Shown piece by piece: positions 10,631-62,251 of a DNA stretch of 64,000 bases. The notes beneath the pieces are model-generated. The model was not told the origin of the DNA, ran no database searches, and saw only the letters and a program-made list of their open reading frames with translations. Each line of letters opens with the position of its first letter. Within the stretch, counting starts at the first letter, position 1. The DNA lies in contig NIVC01000309.1 of assembly GCA_002269645.1 (NCBI GenBank), forward strand, positions 248,001 to 312,000, read 5' to 3'. Source of the stretch: Macrostomum lignano. Taxonomy: Eukaryota. The position numbers and the translations under genes are program-made.

Positions 10631-13600
10631 GAATGTCTGTCTATGTCTGTCTGTCTGTCTGTCTATGTCTGTCTGTCGCTATCTCCACCCTGACACCACC
10701 ACGCCATGGCTGTCACTCGCAGCTGAACGGCGATCGCCTGAAGCAGGACTACAGCCGCATCCAGGAGTGGCCGTTCAACTCCGACACCAAGCTGATGACG
10801 GTGAAATGCGAAAGAAAATCTTCTGCAGTAGATAACTCTGCGGTGAGCGAATATCGGGTCAATTTGAATGATGAGTATTTGTAAAAGGCGGTGTTTTGAG
10901 ATTGAAGTGTTTTCAATACTCGTATTTGGTTTAGTAACTAAGCCGACGTATTTTTTGTGTTTTTTTAGCCAAGAAGATTGGTAAGTATCAGAAGCTGCAG
11001 TCCTAGAGTTAGAATTAGAATATCCTTTGCGCAATCTTCTTAGGGCGTTGATTGTTTGTTTTTCATCTGAAAGTTTATTCAAATCGTTTAATTTGTGTAA
11101 TGATTTTTAGACTGATTTTTCTATTAATCATATAGTACATAGTGTCCGATATGAGCCAAGTTATTAACCGATTGCTCAGGACTGATTCTCTGGGTTCGAT
11201 TCGCAGCCATGAAGGGCGACTCTCAAGGCGCAGAGAGTGACATGCCTGAGGATTAGAAAGTCAGAGCCGCTGTGCACCCCGTGTGAGCGTGTGTGTGAGT
11301 TTGTGTTTGCCTACAGTATTGGCGCGCAACGGCAACCCACCAGCTAACTAAATTGATCGGGAGGGGCAGCGGCAACCCATCAGCTGACTAAATGGATCGG
11401 GCAAGGGGCAGCGGCAACCCACCAGCTAACTAAATTGATCGGGAGGGGCAGCGGCAACCCACCAGCTAACTAAATTGATCGGGAGGGGCAGCGGCAACCC
11501 ACCAGCTAACTAAATGGATCGGGTGGGGCAGCGGCAACCTACCAGCTACCTAAATGGATCGGGGAAGGGCAGCGGCAACCCACCAGCTAACTAAATGGAT
11601 CGGGTGGGGGCAGTCCCGGCAGCGGCAACCCACACCCGGTACACCCTGTGTGAGCGTGTGCACAAGTGCGTGCCTGTGTACAGTATTGGCACGCTTGTTT
11701 GGCAAATGCCATAGGCCTAGCTAAAACCCAAAGGTAAGAATATTTTACATTGATGAAGAGCCAGCATCTCTGCCCCACCACAAAACCACTGGCAGGACCT
11801 GCCAACATCTGTATTCTTTGTCAAAGGCGCGCCAGACCGACTGGTTCGCGCCTGCACCAGCTACTGGAACGAGCGCGGCCAGCTAGAGTCCATGACCTCC
11901 GGGCAGGAGGCCCGGATCAACGACTGGGCTGCCCAGCTGGGGGTGGGCGGCCTCCGCGTGCTGGGACTCGCCTGTGGACCCGACCAGCAGAATCTGACTT
12001 TCTGCGGCCTAGTTGGATTGCTAGACCCGCCTAGGCCAGGCGTTAAAGACTCGATACGCATTTTGCAGCAATCTGGCGTGCTAGTTACTATGGTAACCGG
12101 CGACGCTATGGAGACCGCTTGCACGATAGCTCGCCAACTGGGCATCTCAGGCGGCACCGGACAGCCAATCAGCGGCGAGCAGCTGGACCAAATGCAGCCG
12201 GACGATCCGCGTATACCGGAGACGCGCATCTTCTATAGGACCAGCCCTAGGCACAAGAACAAAATTGTGCGGGCTTTCCAGGTTGGCCTCTCGCTCTCTA
12301 CCCACTCTACCCCGCTCTCTACCCACTACCCCGCTCTCTACCCACTCTACCACGCTCTCTACCCACTCTACCACGCTCTCTACCCACTCTACCACGCTCT
12401 CTACCCACTCTACCCCGCTCTCTTCCCACTCTACCCCGCTCTCTACCCACTCTACCCCGCTCTCTACCCACTCTACCCCGCTCTCTACCCACTCTACCCC
12501 GCTCTCTACTCACTCTACCACGCTCTCTACCCACTCTACCACGCTCTCTACCCACTCTACCCCGCTCTCTACCCACTCTACCACGCTCTCTACCCACTCT
12601 ACCCCGCTCTCTACCCACTCTACCCTTCCCTTTATCACTCTACCCCGCTCTACCACTCTACTCTGCTCTCTACCCTCTCTTCCCACTCTACCCCGCTCTC
12701 TACCCACTCTACCCCGCTCTCTACCTACTCTACCTCGCTCTCTACCCACTCTACCCCGCTCTCTACCCACTCTACCCCGCTCTCTACTCACTCTACCCTA
12801 CTCTACTCACTCTACCCTACTCTACTCACTCTACCCCGCTCTACGACTCTTCTCCGCTCTCTACCCACTCTACCCCGCTCTCTACTCACTGTTTTCCACT
12901 CTACCCACTCTATCGGACTCTCTACCCACTCAACCACCGCCACAGGCCGTTGGCAAAGTGGTGGCCATGACAGGCGACGGAGTGAACGACGCCGTAGCCC
13001 TGAAAGCCGCCGACATTGGCATCGCCATGGGCATGATGGGCACCGAGGTGTCCAAGGAGGCGGCCGACATGATCTTAATAGACGATCACTTCCAAACCAT
13101 CCTAGCCGCTGTTGAGGAGGGCAAAGCAATATTTCACAATATTCGCTGCTTTATCAGATTTCAATTGTCTACTAGCATAGCCGCCCTGACTCTGGTCACC
13201 ATGGCAACGGTGTTCAATTTGCCGAGCCCGTTGAATGCGATGCAAATCCTGTGGATTAACATCTTGATGGACGGGCCGCCGGCTCAATCGCTCGGAGTTG
13301 AACCGCTGGATCCCGATTTGCGAAAGAAGCCGCCAAGGAGGCCCTCCGACTCCGTGCTGCCCATGGAGCTGCTGCTGGGGGTGCTGCGGTCCGCCCTCAT
13401 CATTGTGGCCGGCACCCTGTTCGTGTTCCACCGGGAGATGAGCGATAATAAGGTGGGCTGCTCCGCCATCACTGATGCCTCTCGGGTCGTCAGAATGGGC
13501 CACGGCCAGCCTCCCAGATCCTCAGTTGCTGGGCCACCCTCCCTCCCAGATCCTCAGTTGCTGGGCCACCCTCCCTCCCAGATCCTCAGTTGCTGGGCCA

Positions 13601-15968
13601 TCCTCCCAGATCCTCAGTTGCTGCGCCACCCTCCCTCCCAGATCCTCAGTTGCTGGGCCACCCTCCCAGATCCTCAGTTGCTGGGCCACCCTCCCTCCCA
13701 GATCCTCAGTTGCTGGGCCACCCTCCCTCCCAGATTCTCAGTTGCTGGGCCACCCTCCCAGATCCTCAGTTGCTGGGCCACCCTCCCTCCCAGATTCTCA
13801 GTTGCTGGGCCACCCTCCCTCCCAGATCCTCAGTTGCTGGGTCAGCCTCCTAGATCCTCAGTTGCTGGGCCACGGCCAGCCTCCCAGATTCTCAGTTGCT
13901 GGGCCACCCTCCCTCCCATATCCTCAGTTGCTATGCCACCGCCAGGCCAGCCTCCCAGATCCTCAGTTGCTGGGCCAGCCTCCCAGATCCTCAGTTGCTA
14001 TGCCACCGCCAGGCCAGCCACCCGGATCCCCTTCCTGTCACTGCATTAATCACTATCCATTTACAGGTGACTCCCCGCGACACCACAATGACGTTCACCT
14101 GTTTCGTACTATTCGACATGTTCAACGCTCTGTCCTGCCGTTCAAAATCCAAGAGCATCTTCACCATCGGTCTGTTCTCCAATCGGACCTTCTGCATAGC
14201 CGTGGGTCTGTCCCTCATCGGCCAGCTGCTGGTCATCTACGTGCCCCCGTTCCAGGCGATCTTTCAGACTGAGGCTCTCTACGCTACTGGTAAGTTTCTT
14301 ATGTCTAAATAGTTCTCTCTCTATCGTATTATTTTTCAATCAAATCTTTCTAAAAATGAACTTCATTTTTTCAATCTTATTTCTGCTAACTCTGGATTAG
14401 TTGCTGACGAAGTTTTCTTCTTATAAGTGAAAGTAAAGGCTATGGGGGGGGGCATGTCAATGATTTGTCTTCCCACCCCACCTTGTGACCCGTTGTGGAA
14501 ATCAATAATTTTGCTTCAGGGCGCCAAAATATAGCTAAATTGGAATCTCGGCTTGGCTCTGCTCGTGCAATTAACGCCCAGCTTGATGGCCAACCCCCAA
14601 AGGCGCAGTGAAGTGTACATGCCTAACGATAAACAAAGTTAGGGCCGCTGTACACTCCTGTGTGAGTGTGTGCCTGTGCGTATGACTGCGTACGTATCTG
14701 CGCGCTTCTGTGCCTGCTCAGGGGAGTCGGCGGAATGAGCAGCAATGCCTCTCGCCGGTTGTGTGACAATGTCGCTTAAAGTGCGCCAGGGTGCACACAG
14801 GCATCTGCCTCTAATTAAATAAAGTAGACCAGGTCCCAGGGCTTGCGTAATACTTTTTATTTCTTTCAATTATTTGACATTTCCAATAGAATCAGCGTGC
14901 AAATTTTGCTAACAGTGGACTCAACATTCATTTTTATCTATTATGTAATTACTCGTAACAGTTTAATTTAATATTACTTAAAGTCGCCTTGGCGCGTTGG
15001 TTTTTATTAGGCAATCTTCATTTTCACTACTCTCTATATTTATATCTTTATTTTATTCTGAAATATAAACCTAGGTTCAGAGAGAGCAGCGGCAACCCAC
15101 TACCTAAATTAAGATCGGGGGAGGGCAGGGGCAACCCATAAGCAAACTAAATGGATCGGGTAGGGGGGCAGCGGCAACCCACCAGCTAACTAAATGGATC
15201 GCGTAGGGGCAGCGGCAACCCACCAGCTAACTAAATGGATCGCGTAGTGGCAGCGGCAACCCACCAGCTAACTAAATGAATCTGGCAAGGGGCAGCGGCA
15301 ACCCACCAGCAAACTAAATGGATCGGGTAGGGGCAGCGGCAACCCACCAGCTAACTAAATGGATCGCGTAGGGGCAGCGGCAACCCACCAGCTAACTAAA
15401 TGGATCGGGCAAGGGGCAGCGGCAACCCACCAGCTAACTAAATGGATCGCGTAGTGGCAGCGGCAACCCACCAGCTAACTAAATGGATCTGGCAAGGGGC
15501 AGCGGCAACCCACCAGTAAACTAAATGGATCGGGTAGGGGCAGCGGCAACCCACCAGCTAACTAAATGGATCGCGTAGGGGCAGCGGCAACCCACCAGCT
15601 AACTAAATGGATCGGGCAAGGGGCAGCGGCAACCCACCAGCTAACTAAATGGATCGGGAAGGGCAGCGGCAACCCACCAGCTAACTAAATGGATCGGGAA
15701 GGGCAGCGGCAACCCACCAGCTAACTAGATGGACCGGGGAGAGTTCAGATAGGTTATTTATAAATCTAGAACTATGATAACTAAGCTCAAAGTGGTCACT
15801 CGCATTGCAGACCTGCTATTCCTGGTGTGCCTGTGCTCCACAGTGTTCTGGATCTCTGAGCTGGCCAAGCTGATGCACCGGCATCATTACAATTTCAGTC
15901 GGGCAGCCCTATCGCTAATTGGCTTTAATAATCGTCGGTCAACTAAATTTTCTGACAGTATTGTGTGA
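7326..15968 (+). CDS. ATP2C1: Secretory-pathway Ca2+/Mn2+ P-type ATPase (SPCA), ~960 aa, 9 exons
   Basis: Exons 7326-7442, 7951-8267, 8857-9168, 9692-10334, 10723-10842, 11796-12281, 12946-13452, 14067-14289, 15811-15968; all GT-AG, phases consistent, total 2883 nt. Motifs [27 protein letters not shown] (phospho-Asp), [28 protein letters not shown] and [26 protein letters not shown] are SPCA-typical. Exon 1 is the least certain. Confidence 0.95.
7553..7907. repeat. ~22-bp minisatellite (atgagaatcgccctctctaact)n in ATP2C1 intron 1
   Basis: Tandem copies with variable ct-tract. Confidence 0.9.
8275..8745. repeat. 21-bp minisatellite (gtgctcagatatccagctagt)n in ATP2C1 intron 2
   Basis: Tandem copies. 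Confidence 0.95.
9230..9600. repeat. 24-bp minisatellite (tgtatgatttatgacccagattac)n in ATP2C1 intron 3
   Basis: Tandem copies, degenerate at edges. Confidence 0.9.
10335..10677. repeat. (TGTC)n microsatellite in ATP2C1 intron 4
   Basis: Starts at the donor GT and runs ~340 bp. Confidence 0.95.
11145..11330 (+). mobile_element. tRNA-headed SINE-like element, copy 1
   Basis: B-box-like GGTTCGATTC at 11193-11202 with a weak A-box upstream, followed by body aaggcgcag..acatgcct..gccgctgtgcacccc-gtgtgagcgtgtg that is shared with 14600-14780 and partly with 33622-33736. Confidence 0.55.
11330..11635. repeat. ~40-bp minisatellite (ggggcagcggcaacccaccagctaactaaatggatcggga)n in ATP2C1 intron 5
   Basis: Tandem copies; same unit at 15085-15740. 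Confidence 0.93.
12290..12932. repeat. 21-bp minisatellite (ctctacccactctaccccgct)n filling ATP2C1 intron 6
   Basis: Occupies nearly the whole intron (12282-12945). Confidence 0.95.
13500..14030. repeat. 28-bp-based minisatellite (cctcccagatcctcagttgctgggccag)n in ATP2C1 intron 7
   Basis: Tandem copies; same family at 35110-36845. Confidence 0.95.
14600..14780 (+). mobile_element. SINE-like dispersed repeat body, copy 2
   Basis: Near-identical stretch gggccgctgtacactcctgtg..tatgactgcgtac..ggggagtcggcggaatg..atgcctctcgccggttgtgtgacaatgtcgctta also at 33622-33736; 5' part similar to 11224-11295. Confidence 0.7.
15085..15740. repeat. ~41-bp minisatellite (same family as 11330-11635) in ATP2C1 intron 8
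   Basis: Tandem copies ggggcagcggcaacccaccagctaactaaatggatc... Confidence 0.95.
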
Positions 15969-18275: not shown

Positions 18276-19146
18276 ATGTGTATCCTGAATGCGGCTGTAT
18301 TGGGTGCATGTACCTGGATTCTGGGTATCCTGACTGCGGCTGTATTGGGTGCATGTACCTGGATTCTGGGTATCCTGACTGCGGCTGTATTGGGTGCATG
18401 TACCTGGATTCTGGGTATCCTGAATGCGGCTGTATTGGGTGCATGTACCTGGATTCTGGGTATCCTGACTGCGGCTGTATTGGGTGCATGTACCTGGATT
18501 CTGGGTATCCTGACTGCGGCTGTATTGGGTGCATGTACCTGGATTCTGGGTATCCTGACTGCGGCTGTATTGGGTGCATGTACCTGGATTCTGGGTATCC
18601 TGACTGCGGCTGTATTGGGTGCATGTACCTGGATTCTGGGTATCCTGGATGCGGCTGTATTGGGTGCATGTACCTGGATTCTGGGTATCCTGAATGCGGC
18701 TGTATTGGGTGCATGTACCTGGATTCTGGGTATCCTGACTGCGGCTGTATTGGGTGCATGTACCTGGATTCTGGGTATCCTGGATGCGGCTGTATTGGGT
18801 GCATGTACCTGGATTCTGGGTATCCTGACTGCGGCTGTATTGGGTGCATGTACCTGGATTCTGGGTATCCTGACTGCGGCTGTATTGGGTGCATGTACCT
18901 GGATTCTGGGTATCCTGACTGCGGCTGTATTGGGTGCATGTACCTGGATTCTGGGTATCCTGACTGCGGCTGTATTGGGTGCATGTACCTGGATTCTGGG
19001 TATCCTGGATGCGGCTGTATTGGGTGCATGTACCTGGATTCTGGGTATCCTGGATGCGGCTGTATTGGGTGCATGTACCTGGATTCTGGGTATCCTGACT
19101 GCGGCTGTATTGGGTGCATGTACCTGGATTCTGGTTATCCTGACTG
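18276..19146. repeat. 45-bp minisatellite (tgtattgggtgcatgtacctggattctgggtatcctgactgcggc)n, ~19 units
   Basis: Near-perfect tandem copies; unit is a multiple of 3, hence long open frames on both strands. Confidence 0.97.
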
Positions 19147-19769
19147 CGTGAATGATACAGACACAGGTGACACAGTTACCACTAGGTGTTCCTCATCAGG
19201 CTTCGATTGTCTAATAAAGAGATAAGTTTTTTAGTTTCTGGTGATTTTATCCCGACCCCTTCTTGTGTTTCAATTTTCAATTTCAAATATTAAATAAAGC
19301 TATCGTATATTGTAATAGTAATGAGTCACAAACAGAAGCCAATTATATTGTAATGTAAATTCAAATCTGCAACAATTGGCCAACTATTTTGCCAAAGAGG
19401 CTGTGTTCTCTTCTGTTTTGCCTGTGCGACTTCTTTTGCAAGCAAAGCAAACCAAATTCGTAAACAATCAGCATTATTATCCTGCTGTTGCTTTGCTTGG
19501 CTTTGCTTTGCATTATTTTCTTTTCTGTTTTGCTAATCTTTATAACTATTAAATCTTGGTTCTGTTGCAACGGAACATGAAACATTTTTGTTAAACTGTA
19601 CCTGTACTGCAAACACTGTGAACCGGAATACACGCGTAGCTTATCCACCTGACTACTGGACTGAGCGATGGGGTCGGCGTCTTCCTTTTTTGCTTTATTT
19701 TTATCGTTTTAAAGCAAACAGCTTGGGTCTTGTTTGCGATTGATTTTTGCCACTGACTGGAATTGAAAA

Positions 19770-20275
19770 TCAGTTAGCTAGTCAGTTAGCTAGACAGTTA
19801 GCTAGTCAGTTAGCCAGACAGTTAGCTAGTCAGTTTAAATAGACAGTTAGCTAGTCAGTTAGCTAGACAGTTAGCTAGTCAGTTAGCTAGACAGTTAGCT
19901 AGTCAGTTAGCTAGTCAGTTAGCTAGACAGTTAGCTAGTCAGTTAGCCAGACAGTTAGCTAGTCAGTTGGCTAGACAGTTAGCTAGTTATTTAGCTAGAC
20001 AGTTAGCTAATCAGTTAGCTAGTCAGTTAGCTAGTCAGTTAGCTAGTCAGTTAGCCAGACAGTTAGCTAGTCAGTTAGCCAGACAGTTAGCTAGACAGTT
20101 AGCTAGTTATTTAGCTAGACAGTTAGCTAGTCAGTTAGCTAGACAGTTAGCTAGTTATTTAGCTAGACAGTTAGCTAGACAGTTAGCTAGTTATTTAGCT
20201 AGACAGTTAGCTAGACAGTTAGCTAGTCAGTTAGCTAGACAGTTAGCTAGTCAGTTAGCTAGTCAGTTAGCTAGT
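19770..20275. repeat. 12-bp minisatellite (agttagctagtc/agttagctagac)n
   Basis: Tandem copies ending ~40 bp before the PARL-like ATG. Confidence 0.95.
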
Positions 20276-20315: not shown

Positions 20316-21840
20316 ATGCAGACTCCATACGGTAGTCGAATTTGCCATTGCTGCCGCGCCTGCAGCCGCCGACTGCTCACTGTCCTGCTCAGCCCACCCC
20401 GGCCGCCCTCCCTGCAACCTGGTCGGCGATATTTTAACGTGAATAAATCGGCCGTCTCCGATGCCCGCCAGCCGCTGACGAATGCCCAAGATTTTGCCCG
20501 CGCCTTTTTGGCGCCCTACCGTCTGACGGAGAGCGCCAGACGGTTGGCCTGGCGCGGCCGGGCATTCTGGGCGCTGGTGGCTTCCGGCACTGCGTATGGG
20601 ATCTGCCGGCTGTGGGAGACTCACCAGGCTAAGAAGTCTGATCCCAACAGCCTGTACCTGCCGTTCATGGGGGTACAGGTGAGCTGACTTAGGGAGGGTA
20701 TTGCAGCAGCTGACTGACAGAATCAAGGAGGGTATTGCAGCAGCTCACTGACAGAATCAGGGAGGGTATTGCATCAGCTCACTGACAGAATCAGGGAGGG
20801 TATTGCAGCAGCTCACTGACAGAATCAGGGAGGGTATTGCATCAGCTCACTGACAGAATCAGGGAGGGTATTGCAGCAGCTCACTGACAGAATCAGGGAG
20901 GGTATTGCATCAGCTCACTGACAGAATCAGGGAGGGTATTGCAGCAGCTCACTGAGAGAGTGAATAAATTAAGATATCCTTAGCTTGGCTACTGTCAGTA
21001 GGCTGTTGCAGTCGCATTAACAATCTCTATCAAATTCCAACGCAGCCCGGGCTGTCCCGCTGGTCCCTGCTTGGCCCGTACGCAGTCGTCCTGATGCTGA
21101 GCAGCTGTGTGTTTGCCGCTTGGCGAATCTTCGGCCTGGCCTCGCTGCAGCCCGCCGCCGCCGCCGCTGCGGCCGGGTCTCGGATTTCTCTGCTAGGCGC
21201 TGAGAAGTTCCTTCGCCTATTCGCTGACAAGCCGGGCCTCGGTCCCACTGTCAGGGCCTTCTCTCGGCCGCTGCTCAGCCCGCTGGGATCGGCTCTGAGT
21301 CATCGGACAGTCGGGCACTTCCTAGCCAACCAGCTGGTACTTTTTGGCGCCCTAACCAGCTGCATTGGCAAAATGTCGCCGGGCGAATTCGTTGCCTTCT
21401 CCGTAGCGGCGGCCTACGCTACCAGTTTGGCCAGTGTGCTGGCCATGACGCTGGCCAATCGGTTTGTGTTTAGCCTGGGCGCTAGCGGTGTGCTGTCGGC
21501 TCTGGTGGCCTACAATGCGCTGACTTTTGACCACAATGTCCATCTCGGTCAGCAACAGGAGAGCGGCAGTAGCTCCCCATCGAGTCTGGCTCTGCTCGGT
21601 GTCATTCCGCTGCCCTGGCTGACACCGGCTGTTGGCCTGTCCGTCTGGGCCGGAGTCGAGGCCGTCAGCTGGATGGTTACCGTCTGGCGGGGTCGCCTGC
21701 CGCGGTTGAACCATCCAGCGCACCTGGCTGGCATCGGCTTCGGCTGTCTGTACGCTGTGTGGGGCCACCAGGCTCTGTGGTCGGCGCACCCTGTGCCGCG
21801 GCTGCGGCTGCCTGAGGCGACCGCTCTGTCTGATAACTGA
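20316..21840 (+). CDS. PARL: PARL-like mitochondrial rhomboid intramembrane serine protease (~385 aa, 2 exons), catalytically intact
   Basis: Exons 20316-20678 and 21046-21840 (GT-AG, phase 0). SHRTVGHFLANQLVL matches PARL SHFSLFHMAANMYVL; catalytic SLGASG and NHPAHLAG motifs present; Arg-rich N-terminus resembles a mitochondrial presequence. Orthology versus paralogy to PARL not tested. Confidence 0.82.
20688..20955. repeat. 34-bp minisatellite (cagaatcagggagggtattgcagcagctcactga)n in the PARL-like intron
   Basis: Tandem copies starting ~10 bp after the donor. Confidence 0.95.
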
Positions 21841-21899
21841 TTGGCTGCTGTGTCAGTATTGTGCCATGTGGATGTCATTTTTGTGTCCGTATTGTGGCA

Positions 21900-22420
21900 C
21901 TTTGTCCTCACCATCTGCCCTGTGTCCTCTCCCTGTGTCCTTACCATCTGCCCTGTGTCCTCTCCCTGTGTCCTCACCATCTGCCCTGTGTCCTCACCCT
22001 GTGTCCTTACCATCTGCTCTGTGTCCTCACCCTGTGTCCTTACCATCTGCTCTGTGTCCTCACCCTGTGTCCTCACCATCTGCTCTGTGTCCTCACCATC
22101 TGCCCTGTGTCCTCTCATCATCTCCCCTGTGTCCTCACCATCTGCCCTGTGTCCTTACCATCTGCTCTGTGTCCTCACCCTGTGTCCTCACCATCTGCTC
22201 TGTGTCCTCACCATCTGCCCTGTGTCCTCTCATCATCTCCCCTGTGTCCTCACCATCTGCCCTGTGTCCTCACCATCTGCCCTGTGTCCTCACCATCTGC
22301 CCTGTGTCCTCACCATCTGCCCTGTGTCCTCACCATCTGCCCTGTGTCCTCACCATCTGCCCTGTGTCCTCACCCTCTGCCCTGTGTCCTCACCATCTGC
22401 CCTGTGTCCTCACCCTATTT
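21900..22420. repeat. 20-bp minisatellite (tgtgtcctcaccatctgccc)n
   Basis: Tandem copies just after the PARL-like stop codon. Confidence 0.95.
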
Positions 22421-22804
22421 CTCATCACCCCGTCAGTTGGCTGTTCTCGCCCTCCCTGTGTGTCCGCACAAATCTGAACTTTTCCATCCGGTTCAACTGC
22501 AGCAATTAGTGTTCACGTAGAACTTTGCAAATGGCAAACTGTGCTCTGAAAGTTTTGCTTGCATATCTTTAACAATAAATTGTGTCATGCTATTGGCATT
22601 CATATAGCCAATGTATCGCTGCTACATGCCTACTCAAGTATGATGTGTGCCTGCCATGAAAGTTTCTATTTTGGGTTCAAATTTCCCATGTCTATTAGAG
22701 TATTCTAGTATATATTTCAAATATAATTTGCATGTTTAACAAATTCGGATTTGTTAGCTTTCGAATTTGGACTCAGTGTAATTTATTGTTTAATAATTAC
22801 TGTC

Positions 22805-23520
22805 CCTCTCTCCCCACCCTCTCCCTGTGTTCCCACCTTCCCACCTCCATGTGTCCCCACCCTCTCCCTGTGTTCCCACCTTCCCACCTCCATGTGTCCC
22901 CACCCTCTCCCTGTGTTCCCACCTTCCCACCTCCATGTGTCCCCACCCTCTCCCTGTGTTCCCACCTTCCCACCTCCATGTGTCCCCACCCTCTCCCTGT
23001 GTTCCCACCTTCCCACCTCCATGTGTCCCCACCCTCTCCCTGTGTTCCCACCTTCCCACCTCCATGTGTCCCCACCCTCTCCCTGTGTTCCCACCTTCCC
23101 ACCTTCATGTGTCCTCACCCTCTCCCTGTGTTCCCACCTTCCCACCTTCATGTGTCCTCACACTCTCCCTGTGTTCCCACCTTCCCACCATGTGTCCCCA
23201 CCCTCTCCCTGTGTTCCCACCCTCTCCCACTGTGTCCCCACCCCCTCCCTATGTCCTCACCCTCTCCCTGTGTTCCAAACTTCCCACCATGTGTCCCCAC
23301 CCTCTCCCTGTGTTCCCACCCTCTCCCACTGTGTCCCCACCCCCTCCCTATGTCCTCACCCTCTCCCACTGTGTCCCCACCCCCTCCCTATGTCCTCACC
23401 CTCTCCCTGTGCTCCCACCTTCCCACCTCCATGTGTCCCCACCCTCTCCCTGTGTTCCCACCTTCCCACCTTCTCCATGTGTCCCCACCCTCTCCCTGTG
23501 TCCCCACCCTCTCCCCTGGT
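22805..23520. repeat. 43-bp minisatellite (ccaccctctccctgtgttcccaccttcccacctccatgtgtcc)n
   Basis: Tandem copies upstream of the second rhomboid-like gene. Confidence 0.95.
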
Positions 23521-23616
23521 GGGAGCAGCCACCCAGATCCCGTGGCAAAGAGTTGGCATGGCAACATTTCAGGCACAAGAAATTCTCGCACCTGTCCAAC
23601 ATCAGCAGCTGCTGCT

Positions 23617-26460
23617 ATGCCGATCTTCCTCTGCCTCAGCTGCCGCAGCCGGCTCTTGCTCGACTTAGCCAGCGGCTCCCTCCCGCTGCTCCGGCCGAGT
23701 CGCCGCTGTCTGAAGGCGTCGCCGCGGCCTTCGCCGAACGGGCAGCAGCAGCAGCAGCGGGGGCAGCCGAAGCCCAAGCTGTTCTTCAGGCGCATCGGCC
23801 AGCTGGCGGAGTCGCCGGTTTCAACCGAGCCGCTGTCGCTGTCAGCCGGAGGCCACGCCTTCCAGCTGGCCGCCAGGGCCGTCGCAGCCCTGGCAGTGGG
23901 CGGCCTGGTGTCCGTGATGGTCAGCGAGCGTCGGAACCGTCACCGACGCGACTGTGCCAGTCAGCTGAGTCAGTACGACCTGGGCTACGTTGGCATTCAG
24001 GAAGACGACGGCTTGGACAAGATTGTCCAGGATTTAAGATGGACATCGCCTGCCCTGCTCTACTGCGGCGTGGCGCTGGCCCTCAACAGCCTGCTGGGCT
24101 CCAGGCGGATGCCGCTTGATAAGCTGGCCAAGCTGAGCCGGCATGCGCTGGACCAGCCCGGCAGGTGGGCCCTGCTCTGTGCCCTTTTTCAGTACCCTTT
24201 CAGTGCCTTTTTTGAGCCCTTTTAAGTGCCTATTTAGAGCCCTTTCTAAGTGCCTTTTCAGTGCCCTTTTTAGTGCCTTTTTAGAGCCTTTTTAAGTGCC
24301 TATTTAGAGCCCTTTCTAAGTGCCTTTTCAGTGCCTTTTTAGAGCCCTTTTTAGAGCCCTTTTTAGTGCCTATTTAGAGCCCTTTCTAAGTGCCCTTTTA
24401 GTGCCTATTTAGAGCCCTTTCTAAGTGCCTTTTCAGTGCCTTTTTAGAGCCCTTTTTAGAGCCTTTTTAAGTGCCTATTTAGAGCCCTTTCTAAGTGCCT
24501 TTTCAGTGCCCTTTTAGAGCCCTTTTTAGAGCCCTTTTTAGTGCCTATTTAGAGCCCTTTCTAAGTGCCCTTTTAGTGCCTATTTAGAGCCCTTTCTAAG
24601 TGCCTTTTCAGTGCCTTTTTAGTGCCTTTTTAGAGCCCTTTTAAGTGCCTATTTAGAGCCCTTTCTAAGTGCCTTTTCAGTGCCTTTTTTAGCCCTTTCT
24701 AAGTGCTTTTTTAGTGCCTTTTCTCAGTGCCTTTTTAGTGCCTTTTCTCAGTGACTTTTTAGTGCCTTTTCTCAGTGCCTTTTTAGAGCCCTTTCTCAGT
24801 GACTTTTTAGAGCCCTTTCTCAGTGCCTTTTTAGAGCCCTTTCTCAGTGACTTTTTAGTGCCTTTTCTCGGTGCCCGTTCAGTGCCCTCTCTCAGTGCCC
24901 TTTCTCGTTTTCTTTCTTGGTACGTTTCCCAGTGTCCTGTGCCTTTTTAAATGCTTTGTCTTTGTCACGTGTCCAACTCTAGTGAGTGCCCCAGTGCCTG
25001 TGCCCTACTCTGCCCATCCTCAGTGCCCATTGTTGTTAGTGTGCAAGATTGCATCAGGCACCACGGGTCTTCAATGCCAACAATGTCCATTGCTGTTCTA
25101 CCGCACTGTACACTTCTTAACTTACCTGTGCACCCACCGATCCCTGCCTCAACCAGGTCGGCCATCCTGACTTCTCCCTGGTTGAGTTCGGTCTGCGAAT
25201 TTCAAGTTTTTGGATTCTTATCCACCATCAGCGCGCTGAGTCTGTTGAGCCCACTGAAGTTCGGCTTATCGCCCGAAGAAAAGGTTGGCTGCATTTTGCT
25301 GCTTTTGCTATTGTGGGCGTAACGGGTGTTCCGGTTACCTGGTGACTGGGTGCCCTGGGGTGCCGGTTACCTGGTGACTGGGTGCCCTGGGGTGCCGGTT
25401 ACCTGGTGACTGGGTGCCCTGGGGTGCCGGTTACCTGGTGACTGGGTGCCCTGTGGTGCAGGTGTTCCGGTTACCTGGTGACTGGGTGCCCTGGGGTGCC
25501 GGTTACCTGGTGACTGGGTGCCCTGGGGTGCCGGTTACCTGGTGACTGGGTGCCCTGGGGTGCCGGTTACCTGGTGACTGGGTGCCCTGGGGTGCCGGTT
25601 ACCTGGTGACTGGGTGCCCTGGGGTGCCGGTTACCTGGTGACTGGGTGCCCTGTGGTGCAGGTGTTCCGGTTACCTGGTGACTGGGTGCCCTGGGGTGCC
25701 GGTTACCTGGTGACTGGATGCCCTGGGGTGCCGGTTACCTGGTGACTGGGTGCCCTGTGGTGCAGGTGTTCCGGTTACCTGGTGACTGGGTGCCCTGGGG
25801 TGCCGGTTACCTGGTGACTGGGTGCCCTGGGGTGCCGGTTACCTGGTGACTGGGTGCCCTGGGGTGCAGGTATTTAATCCCAGAGCACCTTTACAACTCA
25901 GCCACAGGCGGCAGACCCTAAGAGTTATTACCCCAATCCGAATCCAGATTCTGGCCTTCATCGCCGGCTCGCTGACCGGCTCAGCATTTCGCTGCGCCTA
26001 TCAGCAGTCTCTGCTGCTGCTGCTCAGCAGGGAGCGCCGGCCGCTGGGCCACTGGTGCGGGCCGCACGCCGGCCTGGCCGCTCTGGTCGCCTTGCACCTG
26101 CTCTCTCTGAGAAGCGTCACTGCCAAAGTGCAACAGCAAAGCCAGTTGGGACAGGAGGAGCCGGCATTCGCTCGATCTGTTCGGCGAGACTTTCTCGAGT
26201 TTCGGTCTGGGCTGTGCTCAGCTCTGCTGATTGGCTGGGCAGCCTTCAACCTAGTCTTCCTGGTGCGCTATCGCCGGTTGCGGGCGCCGGTGTTGGGCCC
26301 GGCGGCACCGGCTTTGAAGCACGCCTCCACCCTGGCTGGACTGGCCGCCGCCTGCGGCATTCATGCCGCTATTGAGTACAGAACTCAAGCAGTTGCTGAG
26401 CTGCCTGCGGCCTCAGACTCAGCTCCCCAACCTGTTCCGGCTGCAACACCTGCCGTTTAA
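23617..26460 (+). CDS. PARL-like rhomboid pseudoprotease (~395 aa, 3 exons), catalytic residues lost
   Basis: Exons 23617-24164, 25157-25283, 25948-26460 (GT-AG, phases 2/0, total 1188 nt, intact frame). Hydrophobic segments align by eye to PARL: LSPEEKILAFIAGSLTG ~ LGQEQFMAVYLSAGVIS; WCGPHAGLAALVA ~ SLGASGAIMTVLA; KHASTLAG ~ DHAAHLGG. Confidence 0.65.
24175..24900. repeat. Composite ~10-11-bp-subunit minisatellite (tagagccctttctaagtgccttttcagtgcc..)
   Basis: Tandem subunits in intron 1 of the pseudoprotease gene. Confidence 0.92.
25325..25870. repeat. 32-bp minisatellite (ggttacctggtgactgggtgccctggggtgcc)n
   Basis: Tandem copies in intron 2 of the pseudoprotease gene. Confidence 0.95.
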
Positions 26461-26599
26461 TTAACTGGGCAGCCGATGTTGGATTGTCTGTCATGCCTGT
26501 CAAAGCTGGACTCAGAAATCATCTGAAATAAACTTGAGCAAAACATTGCTGCTGAATGCGCCTGATTTATACATGCAAGACTGGACTTTTTCGCTGCAA

Positions 26600-29330
26600 A
26601 TAGTTAATGTTAATCATTAAATCGATAATGATGCAGACCCCAAAGCCGGCGTGGCCGTGTAACAATGGACTTCCTGGAAATTTCAGCATCCCTTGAGGGG
26701 ATCATGTAGCGCTGAAAGAGGTAGAGAGTGCGGGGTTCACCGTCAGACAAGACGTGGAGCCCGCCGCCGTCTCTCAAGTCTTCGAGGCAGAGGTCGGCGT
26801 GAGTCAGGAGCTTGCGCTTAGCCATGGCTCTATGGGGCAGGAAACGAATGCCAGCGTCAATCAGACGGCGGGCAGTCTTAGCCGCTTCCCTGTGGACAAA
26901 GCGTTGAGGTCATCGTAAGGAGCAGACGGCAGGAGACTCCTGAGAGTCTTCAGGCAGGTCTTCATCTGCAGTTCGCTAGCCCAGATCAGGCCGCCGGGCG
27001 CGCATGCCGCAGATAGCAGGCCTAACCATTGCTGTGTAGATCCACCAGAGGCGCTTGGGGGTGAGCCCCCAGGTGGTGCCGACAGCCCTGCGCAGCTGCG
27101 CGAGGACTGCGAGGGCCCTCTTGGCTTTTGCTTGAACGTGGGGTGACCAGTTCAGCCTGTGGTCCAGGGTAATACCTAGACATTTAGTCTGCTTGCAGAG
27201 GGGGATTTCCCTTCCGTAAAGCGTGAGCGGCCGAATCTGCCACTTGGTCCTGCTACATTTCCTCCTAACATAGGCTATGGAGGTCTTCGCCTCTCTGATT
27301 AATGCCAGTGCTGCCCCAGTGAGTATGGTGGGCGTTGATGTCGCCGGCAATCATGAGCTCGTAGTTCTTGGCAGAGCAGAGCTCAACCAGCGTAGCGAGG
27401 GCTCTGGGGACGACCGCGGCATCGCCTGGTGCTGCGGGTGGTCTTCCCAGGAAGGAGGTCCTCGGATTGGATGAAACAGATGTCCCTGGTCCGATCTGAG
27501 TCACACACTGAGCGTTTTGATCGCAAAGATGCAAGCTCTGGGAGGCTGGTTGGCCTCGCAATTGTTGCCGGCAGGGGCGTTCTGGGGCTTACCTTTGAGG
27601 TTCCAGGGTTCCTGGACGAGGACGAGCCCCGGCATGTCGAGCTGTTCGACGTAACAACAACAAAATACGCGGCCCCGCAAGCAAAGGTCACAGTTAGAGC
27701 AGGGCGCGTCACATTGCGCGCCGCAGAGCCTGGGAGCGAACGAAGTCCGCTCCGTTGGCAGTGTCGGGTGCCCCAGCGTCGCACAGCAGGCATGGTCCAC
27801 GTATCGACGGGTTCGGGCCTGACCCGCCTGAACGGACCCTGCAAGGTGAGCTGAGCAGGACGTCCTGAACAGTTTGGTGGCAGTAGCCCTCGGCCCGGAT
27901 AACGTGGTCCGCCAGTTGAAGTCGCTGCCGGCGCAGGATGGTGGACAATTGCGCTGCAGCTTGGCCCGATCGCTCAGCGTGGACGTTACCGTCGCCTCCA
28001 CCGCGTGCTTCGGTGCCATCACTCCCATCCCCTCCGCCTCGTTGGTCAGGTCGATGCGATGCGGGTGACGCCTTGCAGCCTCCTGGTGAGTAGCGGACTC
28101 GAATCAGTGGGTCAGCGCCTCCCCGCCGACAGCCTGGCCCTCTGGCTGTTAGGGTGGACGGCGAGAAGTGCGGACCCGCTCATGATACGCCCAGCGCGCG
28201 CTGAATCAGACCGGACCTCCGGGTGCTCCTGGCAGGTCTGCGGTTGCGATTTCCGGTTTCGGCAGCGCAAACTGCCTTACCAGGCTTGGAGTCAGCCGTT
28301 TGCGATCAGCTTCTTTGCCGGAGGAGCCTGGGAAGTTCCGGTTTCGGAAGCCTCAGCATGCTTGGTTTTGTCAGCTTTCCGCTCCTCGCAACGGAGGATG
28401 GTCCGCTAAGTCGGACCAAGGTGGATTGTGGACTAGGCGTCCAGCGCTTAGCCCAGGCGTCAGAGAGCTCTAGCTATAGGATCACCGTGGCCCCCTTCTC
28501 CTGTGGCGTGGTGTAGGAGCCCGTTGATCTCGAGGTCAGGGTGCAGCTTTAGCAGGATCTGCCTAAGCTGATCTCCGGACTTAATGGCACTGACGGCCGG
28601 GATCCAGACGAGAAAGCGTTAGGTCTTTTGTCGCTCGCCCTCGCTGTCGAAGACGAGCTTGCCGAGCTTCTTGGACCAGTTCAGTTTTGGCTGAAGCTCA
28701 CGTAGACTGCGGCTGCTCTCCTAAGAGTTGCACCAGATGAAGATGCAGCCGTCGGTCTTGGCAGATTTGACCACGCTCACGGCCTGCCATGAGCGCAGTA
28801 TCAATTAATGGTGCGCCAGGCACTGTCGAGCTCATCGGCAGGACGTCTCGCTCTTCCCCGGTTGGAGCGTGACCTTTTGATGCGTAGTTGGTGGCGGCGG
28901 TTCCCGAAGGCCCGGCCGCGCTGGTTGTTGCAGGTTTGCTGGGTATCTCACCAGCGGGGGTTGTGTCCAGGGGTCGCTGGGCTTCTTTCGGCCCATAACA
29001 GCAGCAGCCTCGCCCTCCCAGGTTCCCCTCCGCAGGTGGCCGGCCCACAGCTTCCCGTTGTCGCCGTCGCCGCTCATTGCAGCGTTGTTTGCAAGCACGT
29101 AAGGCCTCCGCAGATGGCCCGGGTGCGCGTGCGTGCTTTGTCACCAGAGTGACCAGACGAACCGGCGGCGAGCCCGCGCGTCTGCCCCCGGTGGGGCGGC
29201 GCTGGCGCTAGAGTCACCGGCCGGACCACAGTAGTCTGAAAGTTCTCACGACACTTCAATGCAATCGAATCGACTCTGGTCCAACTGCGACGTATGACGT
29301 CGTTTTTCGGTCGATGTAATGTAAAAAGCA
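26600..29330 (-). mobile_element. Degenerate non-LTR retrotransposon, LOA/R1-like; RT core deleted
   Basis: Minus-strand remnants: ORF1-like segments with stops (GCIFIWCNS*..KLNW..RFLVWIP..LKLHPDLEI), AP endonuclease motifs LVLVQEPW and IAGDINAHHTHWGSTGINQRGEDL, then directly the post-RT segment GREIPLCKQTKCLGITLDHRLNWSPHV..TWGLTPKRLWWIYTAMVRP and FVHREAAKTARRL. Clade assignment by motif recall only. Confidence 0.85.
27652..28030 (-). mobile_element. 5'-truncated RTE-family 3' fragment nested in the LOA/R1-like element
   Basis: STILRRQRLQLADHVIRAEGYCHQTVQDVLL and GQARTRRYVD match the C-terminus of the RTE at 59070-59400; ends in a (TTG)n-like tail just before the host LVLVQEPW motif. 5' boundary uncertain (could reach ~28210). 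Confidence 0.75.
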
Positions 29331-61900: not shown

Positions 61901-62251
61901 GTCCGGCAGTTCCAGGTTGCCAGCCGAAGGGGGTGCTCTGGTAAGGCTGGGGCCCGATGCTGTTGGGCCTCGTGGTCCCCGGCGCCACCCGGAGGATCCA
62001 GGGCCTCGGCCTCCCGCCTGCCTGCGCGCTTTGCTGCTCCATGGGCACGACTGCGCCGGTTGCGCTCTCTGCGCCGCTGGGTGCGGCGGGCAGCACTGCG
62101 CTGGCCGCGGGGGGTCTTGGCCTTGCCGCTGTTGGCTGCCGCAGCTTGAGGGCGCGGCACTCCGAGCCAACCTTGGCTATGCTCCGGGGCGATGCTCTGC
62201 CCAGGGGTGCCAGGAGGTCGCGGCATATTTATACGCCAGGGGCGTATACTA
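58961..62251 (-). mobile_element. Full-length RTE-clade LINE (~3.3 kb; APE + RT), frameshifted
   Basis: APE motifs LATWNCRTL, VALQEV, CAYAPT, VLGDLNA, LDHVL, SDH; RT motifs QNGFR, FVDFRKAFDSV, GVLQGDTLAPFLF, YADDLAL, FTYLG; C-terminal RLQLAGHVIR. (ATGT)n-like 3' tail; TSD ttgcgccatac at 58950-58960 and 62252-62262. At least four frame changes between ORF-track segments. Confidence 0.93.

What the first reader, a model, noticed from the sequence alone, without database searches (positions are those of the whole stretch)
23617..26460. Intact, spliced PARL-like rhomboid pseudoprotease with an iRhom-like GPx motif
Seen: a 3-exon open frame with clean splice sites and rhomboid-like hydrophobic spacing. 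The catalytic GxS site reads G-P-H (WCGPHAG versus SLGASG in the neighbouring gene), the TM6 catalytic His is Thr (KHASTLAG versus NHPAHLAG), and the HxxxN oxyanion motif is absent. Established: iRhoms are inactive rhomboids with Pro at the GPx position and act as trafficking/regulatory cofactors; they are ER proteins of a different branch. Inference: this protein has an Arg/Leu/Ser-rich presequence-like N-terminus, so it may be a mitochondrial pseudo-rhomboid that lost catalysis convergently. I do not recall this class being described in animals.
Basis: partly seen in the sequence, partly recalled or inferred. Interest (0 to 1): 0.75.

Follow-up and report, generated by a model that had tools for sequence, protein, structure and literature searches.

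The report
Possible dead PARL duplicate in flatworm
Next to the mitochondrial rhomboid protease gene (PARL) of the flatworm Macrostomum lignano lies a real, transcribed and conserved gene for a seven-helix membrane protein; it may be a catalytically dead copy of PARL, but sequence evidence alone cannot prove it.

Summary
A three-exon, 395-codon frame with GT/AG introns sits at 23617-26460. It is identical to the RNA-seq-derived GenBank model BOX15_Mlig012007g2 of Macrostomum lignano. A second genomic copy shows purifying selection (13 synonymous vs 6 non-synonymous changes, omega 0.17, p = 2e-4), so it is a working gene, not a pseudogene.

The upstream neighbour is a PARL-type rhomboid: Pfam Rhomboid 32.5 bits, and BLASTP E = 2e-11 to verified human PARL.

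The rhomboid ancestry of the candidate is only weakly supported.
- There is no Pfam hit and no homologue outside M. lignano among 1.8 billion representatives. BLASTP to the neighbour and to human PARL is not significant.
- Collinear tests are consistently but modestly positive, at p about 0.002-0.02: global alignment, profiles that include the neighbour, hhalign, and a motif-graft test against Pfam Rhomboid with 60 controls.
- The protein has seven hydrophobic segments at PARL-like positions.
- AlphaFold without an alignment failed for both the candidate and the genuine rhomboid neighbour, so the fold is untested.

No serine-histidine dyad exists in either plausible alignment register. The "iRhom-like GPx" reading depends on which register is chosen. 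Mitochondrial targeting is inferred only.

Verdict: a plausible (about 55%) lineage-specific PARL-derived pseudoprotease; otherwise an orphan membrane protein.

The parts
20316..20678 (+). Neighbour gene (PARL-type rhomboid protease), exon 1
   Evidence: The two exons 20316-20678 and 21046-21840 join into a 385-aa frame. Pfam Rhomboid 32.5 bits, E 1.2e-7. BLASTP to verified human PARL gives E 2e-11.
21046..21840 (+). Neighbour gene exon 2. It carries HFLAN (the HxxxN motif), SLGASG (catalytic Ser) and NHPAHLAG (catalytic His).
21828..23528 (+). GT-AG interval used as an intron by the fused UniProt model A0A1I8HD18 (806 aa). It joins the PARL frame to the candidate frame.
   Evidence: The P0007 sequence is reproduced only by donor 21827|GT and acceptor AG|23529. 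Whether this splice occurs in vivo is unknown.
23573..23616 (+). 5' untranslated leader of the transcript model. It starts directly after an AG (23571-23572), which is a likely spliced-leader trans-splice acceptor.
   Evidence: The N-terminal extension of P0001 (TRNSRTCPTSAAAA) begins at 23575. The annotation pipeline cuts genes at trans-splice sites (PMC5730564). Trans-splicing at this particular site is an inference.
23617..24164 (+). Candidate exon 1 (codons 1-182 plus 2 nt). It encodes an Arg/Leu/Ser-rich N-terminus, hydrophobic segment A (aa 81-103, 23857-23925) and segment 1 (aa 144-160, 24046-24096).
24165..25156 (+). Intron 1. Most of it is a 24/35-bp minisatellite (24179-24903).
25157..25283 (+). 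Candidate exon 2. It encodes the LTSPWLSS stretch and hydrophobic segment 2 (aa 193-216, 25185-25256).
25284..25947 (+). Intron 2. Most of it is a 32/104-bp minisatellite (25325-25871).
25948..26460 (+). Candidate exon 3, ending in the TAA stop at 26458-26460. It encodes hydrophobic segments 3 (25948-26022), 4 (26056-26124), 5 (26206-26271) and 6 (26320-26376).
26059..26067 (+).
   Evidence: The pairwise alignment with the neighbour puts GPH on GAS. The profile alignment instead puts GP on the GP of PARL's GPSLGASG, and Ala269 on the catalytic Ser.
26317..26340 (+). KHASTLAG. Thr353 (26329-26331) sits where the neighbour (NHPAHLAG) and human PARL (DHAAHLGG) have the catalytic His.
   Evidence: This is the top BLASTP segment, 7/16 identical, E 0.28. 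Also.
26527..26532 (+). AATAAA polyadenylation signal, 67 nt after the stop codon.

Best explanation
The locus encodes a genuine, expressed, selectively maintained 395-aa membrane protein with seven hydrophobic segments, so far known only from Macrostomum lignano. It lies 1.8 kb downstream of the worm's PARL-type mitochondrial rhomboid protease, on the same strand. Its most likely origin is an old or fast-evolving tandem duplicate of that PARL gene. It kept the 1+6 helix layout and remnants of several PARL sequence blocks, but lost the Ser-His dyad and the HxxxN oxyanion motif. It therefore cannot cut substrates. Shown: gene structure, transcript-based model, purifying selection, absence of catalytic residues, adjacency to PARL, and weak collinear similarity. 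Inferred: rhomboid fold; import into mitochondria through the basic, acid-poor N-terminus; and a non-catalytic role in the inner membrane. That role would be binding transmembrane clients or PARL itself and modulating their fate, as iRhoms, Derlins and trypanosome TimRhoms do elsewhere. Possible co-transcription with PARL, followed by trans-splicing, is also inferred.
For: Real gene: the frame equals the RNA-seq-derived model PAA85663.1. The second genomic copy L001 keeps the same gene order, ATPase then rhomboid then candidate. Between the two copies dS = 0.042 and dN = 0.007, omega 0.165, binomial p = 1.8e-4. That omega is identical to the active neighbour's, and non-coding divergence is 3-5% with many indels.

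Neighbour is PARL-type: with the human PARL sequence verified by exact look-up.

Similarity to PARL/rhomboid:
- Global alignment with the neighbour scores 43, against 13 +/- 7 for shuffles (7/3000 reach it). Against 6-residue-window shuffles, 69/3000 reach it. The alignment pairs the N-terminal CxxCR..RLL, RW[TS] before segment 1, L[LT]SP, SP-E-[FI]-[VL]AF, the GxSG region and HxxHLAG, all in order.
- Wild-type candidate against HMMs that contain PARL plus the neighbour scores 4.2-6.7 bits, reached by 0-4 of 1000 window-shuffles.
- hhalign against PARL + neighbour + GlpG gives 313 collinear columns, P = 0.018, reached by 3/200 shuffles.
- Motif-graft test: after six substitutions restoring HxxxN, GASG and His, Pfam Rhomboid matches profile positions 15-134 of 143 at 20.0 bits (E 8e-4). 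None of 60 controls reaches that score, although they carry the same grafted motifs and the same local composition.

Layout: seven segments at PARL-like positions, with loop charges alternating +9, -1, +4, 0, +2, +1, +4, -1, as expected for an N-in 1+6 topology.

The N-terminal 45 residues hold 7 K/R and 1 D/E.
Against: Pfam gives no Rhomboid hit for the wild-type protein or any fragment of it. An exhaustive phmmer search found no relative outside M. lignano. BLASTP to the neighbour gives E 0.28 and to human PARL E 2.9. hhalign of the two single sequences is not significant. Profiles that leave out the neighbour (mammalian PARL; PARL + unverified Pcp1 + GlpG; GlpG alone) give nothing, and so does a profile of the neighbour and its homeologue alone. 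The signal appears only in profiles that combine the neighbour with PARL or GlpG, so it is not tied to the family consensus. Intron positions are not shared with the neighbour. The WR motif of loop 1 is absent (SR instead). The fold is untested. Localisation, partners and function are entirely inferred.
Confidence: 0.55

Rival explanations
1. It is a taxon-restricted ('orphan') multi-pass membrane protein unrelated to rhomboids that merely sits next to PARL. It may share a transcription unit with it. The motif resemblances would be chance matches between Ala/Leu/Gly-rich helices.
For: No family signal by Pfam, phmmer, BLASTP or PDB search. Profiles without the neighbour give nothing. Under the strict local-shuffle null, the global alignment with the neighbour is only p about 0.02. 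The catalytic-site register is ambiguous. Introns are not shared.
Against: Four differently built collinear tests all fall in the top 0-2% of controls. Length, strand, adjacency and the seven-segment layout match the PARL gene. Real rhomboids are themselves almost undetectable pairwise: human PARL against PDB GlpG gives E 1.6, and the neighbour against GlpG scores -0.1 bits. So the negative pairwise results carry little weight.
Confidence: 0.33
2. The frame is not an independent gene but the downstream half of a conjoined PARL-X protein. This is the 806-aa UniProt model, produced by splicing 21827^23529, which removes the PARL stop codon.
For: P0007/A0A1I8HD18 has exactly this structure, with a canonical GT-AG interval and an open frame from 23529 into the ATG at 23617. 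About 7% of M. lignano assembled transcripts are multi-gene precursors.
Against: The RNA-seq and trans-splice-aware GenBank annotation separates the two genes at both loci (PAA85663.1 and PAA57664.1). Other fused UniProt models of the same locus carry frame-shifts typical of an older error-prone assembly. A fusion would invert the membrane orientation of the second seven-helix unit.
Confidence: 0.07
3. It is a decaying pseudogene or a non-coding stretch that happens to be open.
For: There are no homologues outside the species and no domain hit.
Against: The 395-codon frame is intact across three exons in two diverged genomic copies. The only indel is in frame. The ratio is 6 non-synonymous to 13 synonymous changes, against 2.7:1 expected under neutrality (p = 1.8e-4). 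Flanking non-coding DNA carries many indels. The gene model is transcript-derived.
Confidence: 0.04

Closest known systems
PARL / Pcp1 / Rhomboid-7 (mitochondrial 1+6 rhomboid proteases)
   Same: The candidate is adjacent to, and on the same strand as, the worm's PARL-type gene, and is of similar length (395 vs 385 aa). It has an N-terminal extra hydrophobic segment plus six more at matching positions, and a basic N-terminus. It keeps remnants of PARL blocks: L[LTC]SP before helix 2, G..E.[FI].A[FV] at helix 3, G-P/GxxG at helix 4, and H-A-x-x-L-[AG]-G at helix 6.
   Different: It has no catalytic Ser, no catalytic His, no HxxxN and no WR. There is no significant similarity to human PARL and no Pfam Rhomboid hit. 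It would be non-proteolytic.
iRhoms (RHBDF1/2, Drosophila Rho-5)
   Same: The concept is the same: a rhomboid-derived protein that lost catalysis and acts through binding. One alignment register gives Gly-Pro at the dead active site, as in iRhoms.
   Different: iRhoms are ER/secretory-pathway proteins with a 6+1 layout, a long cytoplasmic N-terminal domain and a large iRhom homology domain between helices 1 and 2 (established knowledge). Here loop 1 is about 30 residues, the extra helix is N-terminal, and no iRhom-related Pfam family matches. The GPx equivalence depends on the register.
TimRhom I and II of Trypanosoma brucei
   Same: They are precedents for proteolytically inactive rhomboid-like proteins working in the mitochondrial inner membrane. 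Their Ser-His dyad is not conserved and they were recognisable only by HHpred-level methods (PMC5187411).
   Different: They are found in trypanosomatids, are subunits of the presequence translocase, and are no closer to PARL than to bacterial rhomboids.
Derlins / Dfm1, UBAC2, TMEM115, RHBDD2/3 (other rhomboid pseudoproteases)
   Same: They are catalytically dead rhomboid-fold proteins that engage membrane clients and thin the bilayer (PMC12615303).
   Different: They are ER/Golgi proteins with their own Pfam families, none of which matched. They are not linked to PARL.

Membership tests
Rhomboid superfamily (Pfam PF01694 and relatives) | Significant match to a rhomboid sequence profile | tested here: not met
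   No Rhomboid hit at E <= 10 for the full protein or five fragments. It matches only after six catalytic-motif substitutions (15-20 bits, below the 22.6-bit cut-off). The neighbour passes with 32.5 bits.
Rhomboid superfamily (Pfam PF01694 and relatives) | Residue-level collinear similarity to rhomboids beyond what hydrophobic layout gives | tested here: inconclusive
   None of 60 layout-preserving controls reaches the grafted real sequence. Profiles containing PARL plus the neighbour are reached by 0-4 of 1000 shuffles, and by 13-28 of 1000 when the unverified Pcp1 sequence is added; profiles without the neighbour are not significant. hhalign is reached by 3/200 shuffles. The global alignment is reached by 69/3000 strict shuffles and 7/3000 full shuffles.
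Rhomboid superfamily (Pfam PF01694 and relatives) | Six-helix rhomboid core fold | tested here: inconclusive
   The AlphaFold single-sequence model has pLDDT 46.9 and Foldseek against PDB finds nothing below E 0.4. The control, the true rhomboid neighbour, fails in the same way with pLDDT 42.2. The hydropathy profile shows seven segments.
Rhomboid superfamily (Pfam PF01694 and relatives) | WR motif in loop 1 and GxxxG packing motif in the last core helix | tested here: not met
   After segment 1 the candidate has G-S-R-R, where the neighbour has A-W-R and human PARL has L-W-R. The last helix has G-L-A-A-A (small-xxx-small), where the neighbour has G-I-G-F-G. Motif definitions come from PMC12615303. 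About 20% of family members lack WR.
Active rhomboid proteases | GxSx catalytic serine, (A/G)H catalytic histidine, HxxxN | tested here: not met
   The Ser position is His265 or Ala269, depending on register. The His position is Thr353. HxxxN is replaced by G-F-L-S-T.
PARL subfamily | 1+6 topology (extra helix N-terminal to the core) | tested here: met
   An extra hydrophobic segment at aa 81-103 precedes six further segments. Loop charges alternate as expected for an N-in orientation. This is a hydropathy prediction only.
PARL subfamily | Detectable sequence similarity to PARL orthologues | tested here: not met
   BLASTP to human PARL gives E 2.9. The mammalian PARL HMM gives -2.7 bits. The neighbour reaches E 2e-11 and 21.9 bits.
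PARL subfamily | Mitochondrial inner-membrane localisation through a presequence | not testable with these tools
   Only composition is available: 7 K/R against 1 D/E in the first 45 residues, and maximum hydrophobic moment 0.63. No TargetP or MitoFates was available, and there are no localisation data.
iRhom | iRhom homology domain in loop 1, long cytoplasmic N-terminus, 6+1 topology, Pro before the dead catalytic position | tested here: not met
   Loop 1 is about 30 aa, there are only about 80 aa before the first helix, and the extra helix is N-terminal. No iRhom Pfam families match. The Pro position is register-dependent.
Derlin / TMEM115 / UBAC2 | Match to the family's own profile | tested here: not met
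   None of these Pfam families was reported at E <= 10.

The most novel reading that the evidence does not exclude
An animal carries a PARL-derived mitochondrial rhomboid pseudoprotease. It would be kept under selection beside its active parent, possibly co-transcribed with it as an operon-like unit resolved by spliced-leader trans-splicing, and it would act as a non-cutting partner or decoy that tunes PARL substrate handling in the inner membrane. No PARL-type pseudoprotease turned up for animals in the papers searched here. The only mitochondrial inactive rhomboids found in that literature are the trypanosome TimRhoms.
Probability: 0.3. Interest if true: 0.7.

Novelty: new variant of a known kind. 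Interest (0 to 1): 0.45.

Why it matters
Rhomboid pseudoproteases (iRhoms, Derlins) show that dead intramembrane proteases become regulators of membrane-protein fate. All the animal examples named in the reviews read here work in the ER and secretory pathway. A dead PARL copy retained next to the active gene would extend that principle to animal mitochondria. It would also come in a transgenic, RNAi-amenable flatworm, where its effect on PARL-dependent quality control could be tested directly. If it is not a rhomboid, it is still a conserved, species-restricted membrane protein tightly linked to PARL, and an example of how quickly Macrostomum membrane proteins diverge beyond recognition. Even this worm's true PARL found no relatives outside its own species in word-indexed searches of 5.8 billion proteins.

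Tried and rejected
1. Pfam on the whole protein and five fragments: nothing.
2. Word-indexed homologue search and exhaustive phmmer over 1.84 billion representatives: only M. lignano copies and fused models.
3. Homologue searches with the neighbour, full-length and low-complexity-trimmed core, to collect PARL sequences: only M. lignano.
4. PDB sequence search with the candidate, the neighbour and human PARL. The candidate gave a chance PsaR hit (E 0.05), the neighbour gave nothing, and PARL matched H. influenzae GlpG at E 1.6.
5. AlphaFold single-sequence model plus Foldseek for the candidate, and for the neighbour as a control: both low confidence, with no rhomboid match. The test is therefore uninformative.
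6. hhalign of the two single sequences: not significant.
7. Scan of bacterial and archaeal genomes with the neighbour core to build my own rhomboid profile: no confirmed relatives.
8. Profiles without the neighbour (mammalian PARL, GlpG, PARL + Pcp1 + GlpG): not significant for the candidate. It counts only as a lead, and no conclusion rests on it.
9. Koonin 2003 and the supplements of the 2025 review, sought for family alignments: not held.
10. tblastn of both proteins against the window: no further copies.
11. Pseudogene reading: rejected on dN/dS and frame conservation.
12. iRhom membership: rejected on architecture.
Full report
WHAT IS THERE

The window is Macrostomum lignano DNA: the encoded protein is 100% identical to NCBI PAA85663.1, "hypothetical protein BOX15_Mlig012007g2, partial". 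Exons 23617-24164, 25157-25283 and 25948-26460 on the + strand join into 1188 nt, giving 395 codons and a TAA stop. Both introns have GT...AG boundaries. Each intron consists mostly of its own minisatellite (24179-24903 and 25325-25871). An AATAAA lies 67 nt after the stop (26527-26532).

The GenBank annotation of this assembly was made from a genome-guided RNA-seq transcriptome. Its gene ends were set from spliced-leader and poly(A) reads (PMC5730564), so the three-exon model has transcript support. I could not inspect the reads themselves. The model's open 5' extension starts at 23575, two bases after an AG at 23571-23572. That is what a trimmed trans-splice acceptor would look like, but this is an inference.

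IT IS A WORKING GENE

A second genomic copy, on NIVC01002460.1 (locus L001), has the same gene order: cation ATPase, rhomboid, candidate. M. lignano is described as a hidden polyploid (abstract of PMC10468722). Unique non-coding sequence differs by 3-5% between the copies and carries many indels. The coding sequence differs by:
- one in-frame 3-nt deletion;
- 13 synonymous changes;
- 6 non-synonymous changes.

This gives dS 0.042, dN 0.007 and omega 0.165. Under neutrality, 6 or fewer non-synonymous changes out of 19 has p = 1.8e-4. The neighbouring active rhomboid has the same omega. The pseudogene reading is therefore rejected.

THE NEIGHBOUR IS PARL

The upstream gene (20316-20678 and 21046-21840, 385 aa) matches Pfam Rhomboid at 32.5 bits. 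BLASTP between the neighbour and human PARL gives E = 2e-11 over 193 residues. The alignment pairs HxxxN, SLGASG, H-A-A-H-L-G-G and the C-terminal GH..LW.

This gene is itself very divergent. Two searches of 5.8 billion proteins found only M. lignano relatives, and phmmer against the PDB found nothing.

IS THE CANDIDATE A RHOMBOID? NEGATIVE RESULTS

- Pfam finds nothing for the whole protein or five fragments.
- Exhaustive phmmer over 1.84 billion representatives finds only the species' own copies and fused gene models.
- BLASTP to the neighbour has a best segment of E 0.28, which is KHASTLAG against NHPAHLAG.
- BLASTP to human PARL gives E 2.9.
- hhalign of the two single sequences is not significant.
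- HMMs built without the neighbour give nothing.

These negatives are weak evidence, because the family is barely detectable pairwise even between true members. Verified human PARL hits PDB GlpG only at E 1.6. The neighbour scores -0.1 bits on a GlpG model.

IS THE CANDIDATE A RHOMBOID? POSITIVE RESULTS

All positive results are modest.

(a) Global alignment with the neighbour scores 43, against 13 +/- 7 for shuffles. Seven of 3000 full shuffles reach it, as do 69 of 3000 shuffles confined to 6-residue windows. Reversed-sequence controls score 17. The alignment is collinear and pairs, in order:
- CxxCR..RLL at the N-terminus;
- RW[TS] before helix 1;
- L[LT]SP before helix 2;
- SP-E..[FI][VL]AF at helix 3;
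- the GxSG region;
- HxxHLAG.

(b) The wild-type candidate scores 4.2 bits on a PARL + neighbour HMM (3-4 of 1000 window-shuffles reach this). It scores 6.7 bits when GlpG is added (0 of 1000). The best local stretch pairs AKLSRHALDQPGRSAILTSPWLSS with PARL's TMIRYFTSNPASKVLCSPMLLST.

(c) hhalign against PARL + neighbour + GlpG gives 313 collinear columns and P = 0.018, reached by 3 of 200 shuffles.

(d) Motif-graft test. Six substitutions restore HxxxN, GASG and the His. The sequence then matches Pfam Rhomboid positions 15-134 of 143 in one stretch, at 18.6-20.0 bits. Sixty controls carried the same grafted motifs and the same composition within 6-residue windows. Eleven of them gave any Rhomboid hit, and none reached the real sequence. 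Three earlier window-6 controls scored 12-15 bits, and coarser shuffles gave nothing. So the spacing of the helices relative to the motif sites fits the profile, and the real residue order adds a few bits.

(e) Hydropathy shows seven segments at positions close to those of the neighbour and of human PARL. Loop net charges are +9, -1, +4, 0, +2, +1, +4, -1, the alternation expected for an N-in 1+6 protein.

These tests overlap in their data. Their signal also depends on the neighbour being part of the comparison. That fits a lineage-specific duplicate of the worm's own PARL, but a coincidence is not excluded.

THE FOLD WAS NOT TESTABLE

AlphaFold without an alignment gave pLDDT 46.9, and Foldseek found nothing meaningful. 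As a control I ran the neighbour, a certified rhomboid. It did no better: pLDDT 42.2 and no rhomboid among the hits. The negative result therefore says nothing either way.

CATALYTIC RESIDUES AND THE "GPx" CLAIM

Against the neighbour, G263-P264-H265 lies on G-A-S. Against the PARL-containing profile, G263-P264 lies on the G-P of PARL's GPSLGASG, and the catalytic Ser falls on Ala269. In both registers there is no serine. Thr353 replaces the histidine and HxxxN is gone. If the protein is a rhomboid, it is dead. The resemblance to the iRhom Gly-Pro is only one of two readings. The protein is not an iRhom by architecture: loop 1 is short, there is no long N-terminal domain, and the extra helix is N-terminal.

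HOW IT MOST LIKELY WORKS

My best reading, at about 55%, is a PARL-derived pseudoprotease. It would be imported into mitochondria through its basic N-terminus (7 K/R and 1 D/E in the first 45 residues). It would insert in the inner membrane like PARL and act without cutting. It might bind transmembrane clients or PARL itself, as known rhomboid pseudoproteases do (PMC12615303). TimRhom I and II are inactive rhomboid-like subunits of the trypanosome inner-membrane translocase (PMC5187411).

Localisation, partners and effect are all inferences.

The main rival, at about 33%, is an unrelated orphan membrane protein linked to PARL only by position or by a shared transcription unit. A conjoined PARL-X protein is a minor rival. 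It corresponds to UniProt A0A1I8HD18 (806 aa), which uses a canonical GT-AG interval at 21828-23528.

NOVELTY

Rhomboid pseudoproteases are well known. A PARL-type one in an animal did not turn up in the reviews and searches I could run. If the homology is confirmed, this is a new variant of a known kind, restricted so far to one flatworm. If it is not confirmed, the finding is a conserved orphan gene. Interest is moderate. The decisive step is a deep alignment from other Macrostomum species, followed by profile and structure comparison.

Noticed in passing
window 18280-19148, 19770-20275, 20691-20959, 21903-22414, 22811-23508, 24179-24903, 25325-25871: Every intron and intergenic spacer around the two genes is filled by its own distinct minisatellite, with units of 45, 12, 34, 20/33, 43, 24/35 and 32/104 bp. 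Array lengths differ greatly between the two genomic copies. The PARL intron is 367 bp here but about 1.5 kb in L001.
   Followed up: partly
window 21828-23528; UniProt A0A1I8HD18 (P0007): Several UniProt 'Rhomboid domain-containing protein' entries of M. lignano are fusions of the PARL gene with the candidate. One (806 aa) uses a canonical GT-AG interval that removes the PARL stop codon and reads in frame into the candidate. Others carry frame-shifts. The 'rhomboid' label on the candidate part comes only from the fusion. In addition, the 90% cluster of the candidate also contains the PARL homeologue PAA57664.1, presumably bridged by the fused model.
   Followed up: partly
L001 7343-8146 versus window 21046-21840: The second genomic copy of the PARL-type gene has Asn216 to Ser in the HxxxN oxyanion motif (HFLAN becomes HFLAS). 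It also has a three-alanine expansion and a premature stop eight codons before the end. Its dN/dS remains low (0.165).
   Followed up: partly
window 26863-28388 (- strand): About 1.5 kb is present here but absent from the second copy L001. Its broken reading frames resemble the endonuclease ('GDINAHHTHWGS') and C-terminal reverse-transcriptase parts of a non-LTR retrotransposon. It appears to be a degraded LINE fragment inserted about 330 bp downstream of the candidate's poly(A) signal.
   Followed up: partly
window 59070-62226 (- strand): Long open frames match Pfam reverse transcriptase RVT_1 (E 1.5e-26) and the endonuclease/exonuclease/phosphatase family (E 1.2e-7). This is a fairly intact LINE-type retrotransposon.
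   Followed up: no
window about 11892-14049 (+): These are exons of a P-type cation-transporting ATPase (Hydrolase and Cation_ATPase_C domains) upstream of the PARL gene. The same gene order is seen in the second copy L001.
   Followed up: no
window 23529-23616: The 88 nt upstream of the candidate's ATG are open in the same frame, with no stop codon. This is why GenBank calls the CDS 'partial' and why fused models can read through.
   Followed up: partly
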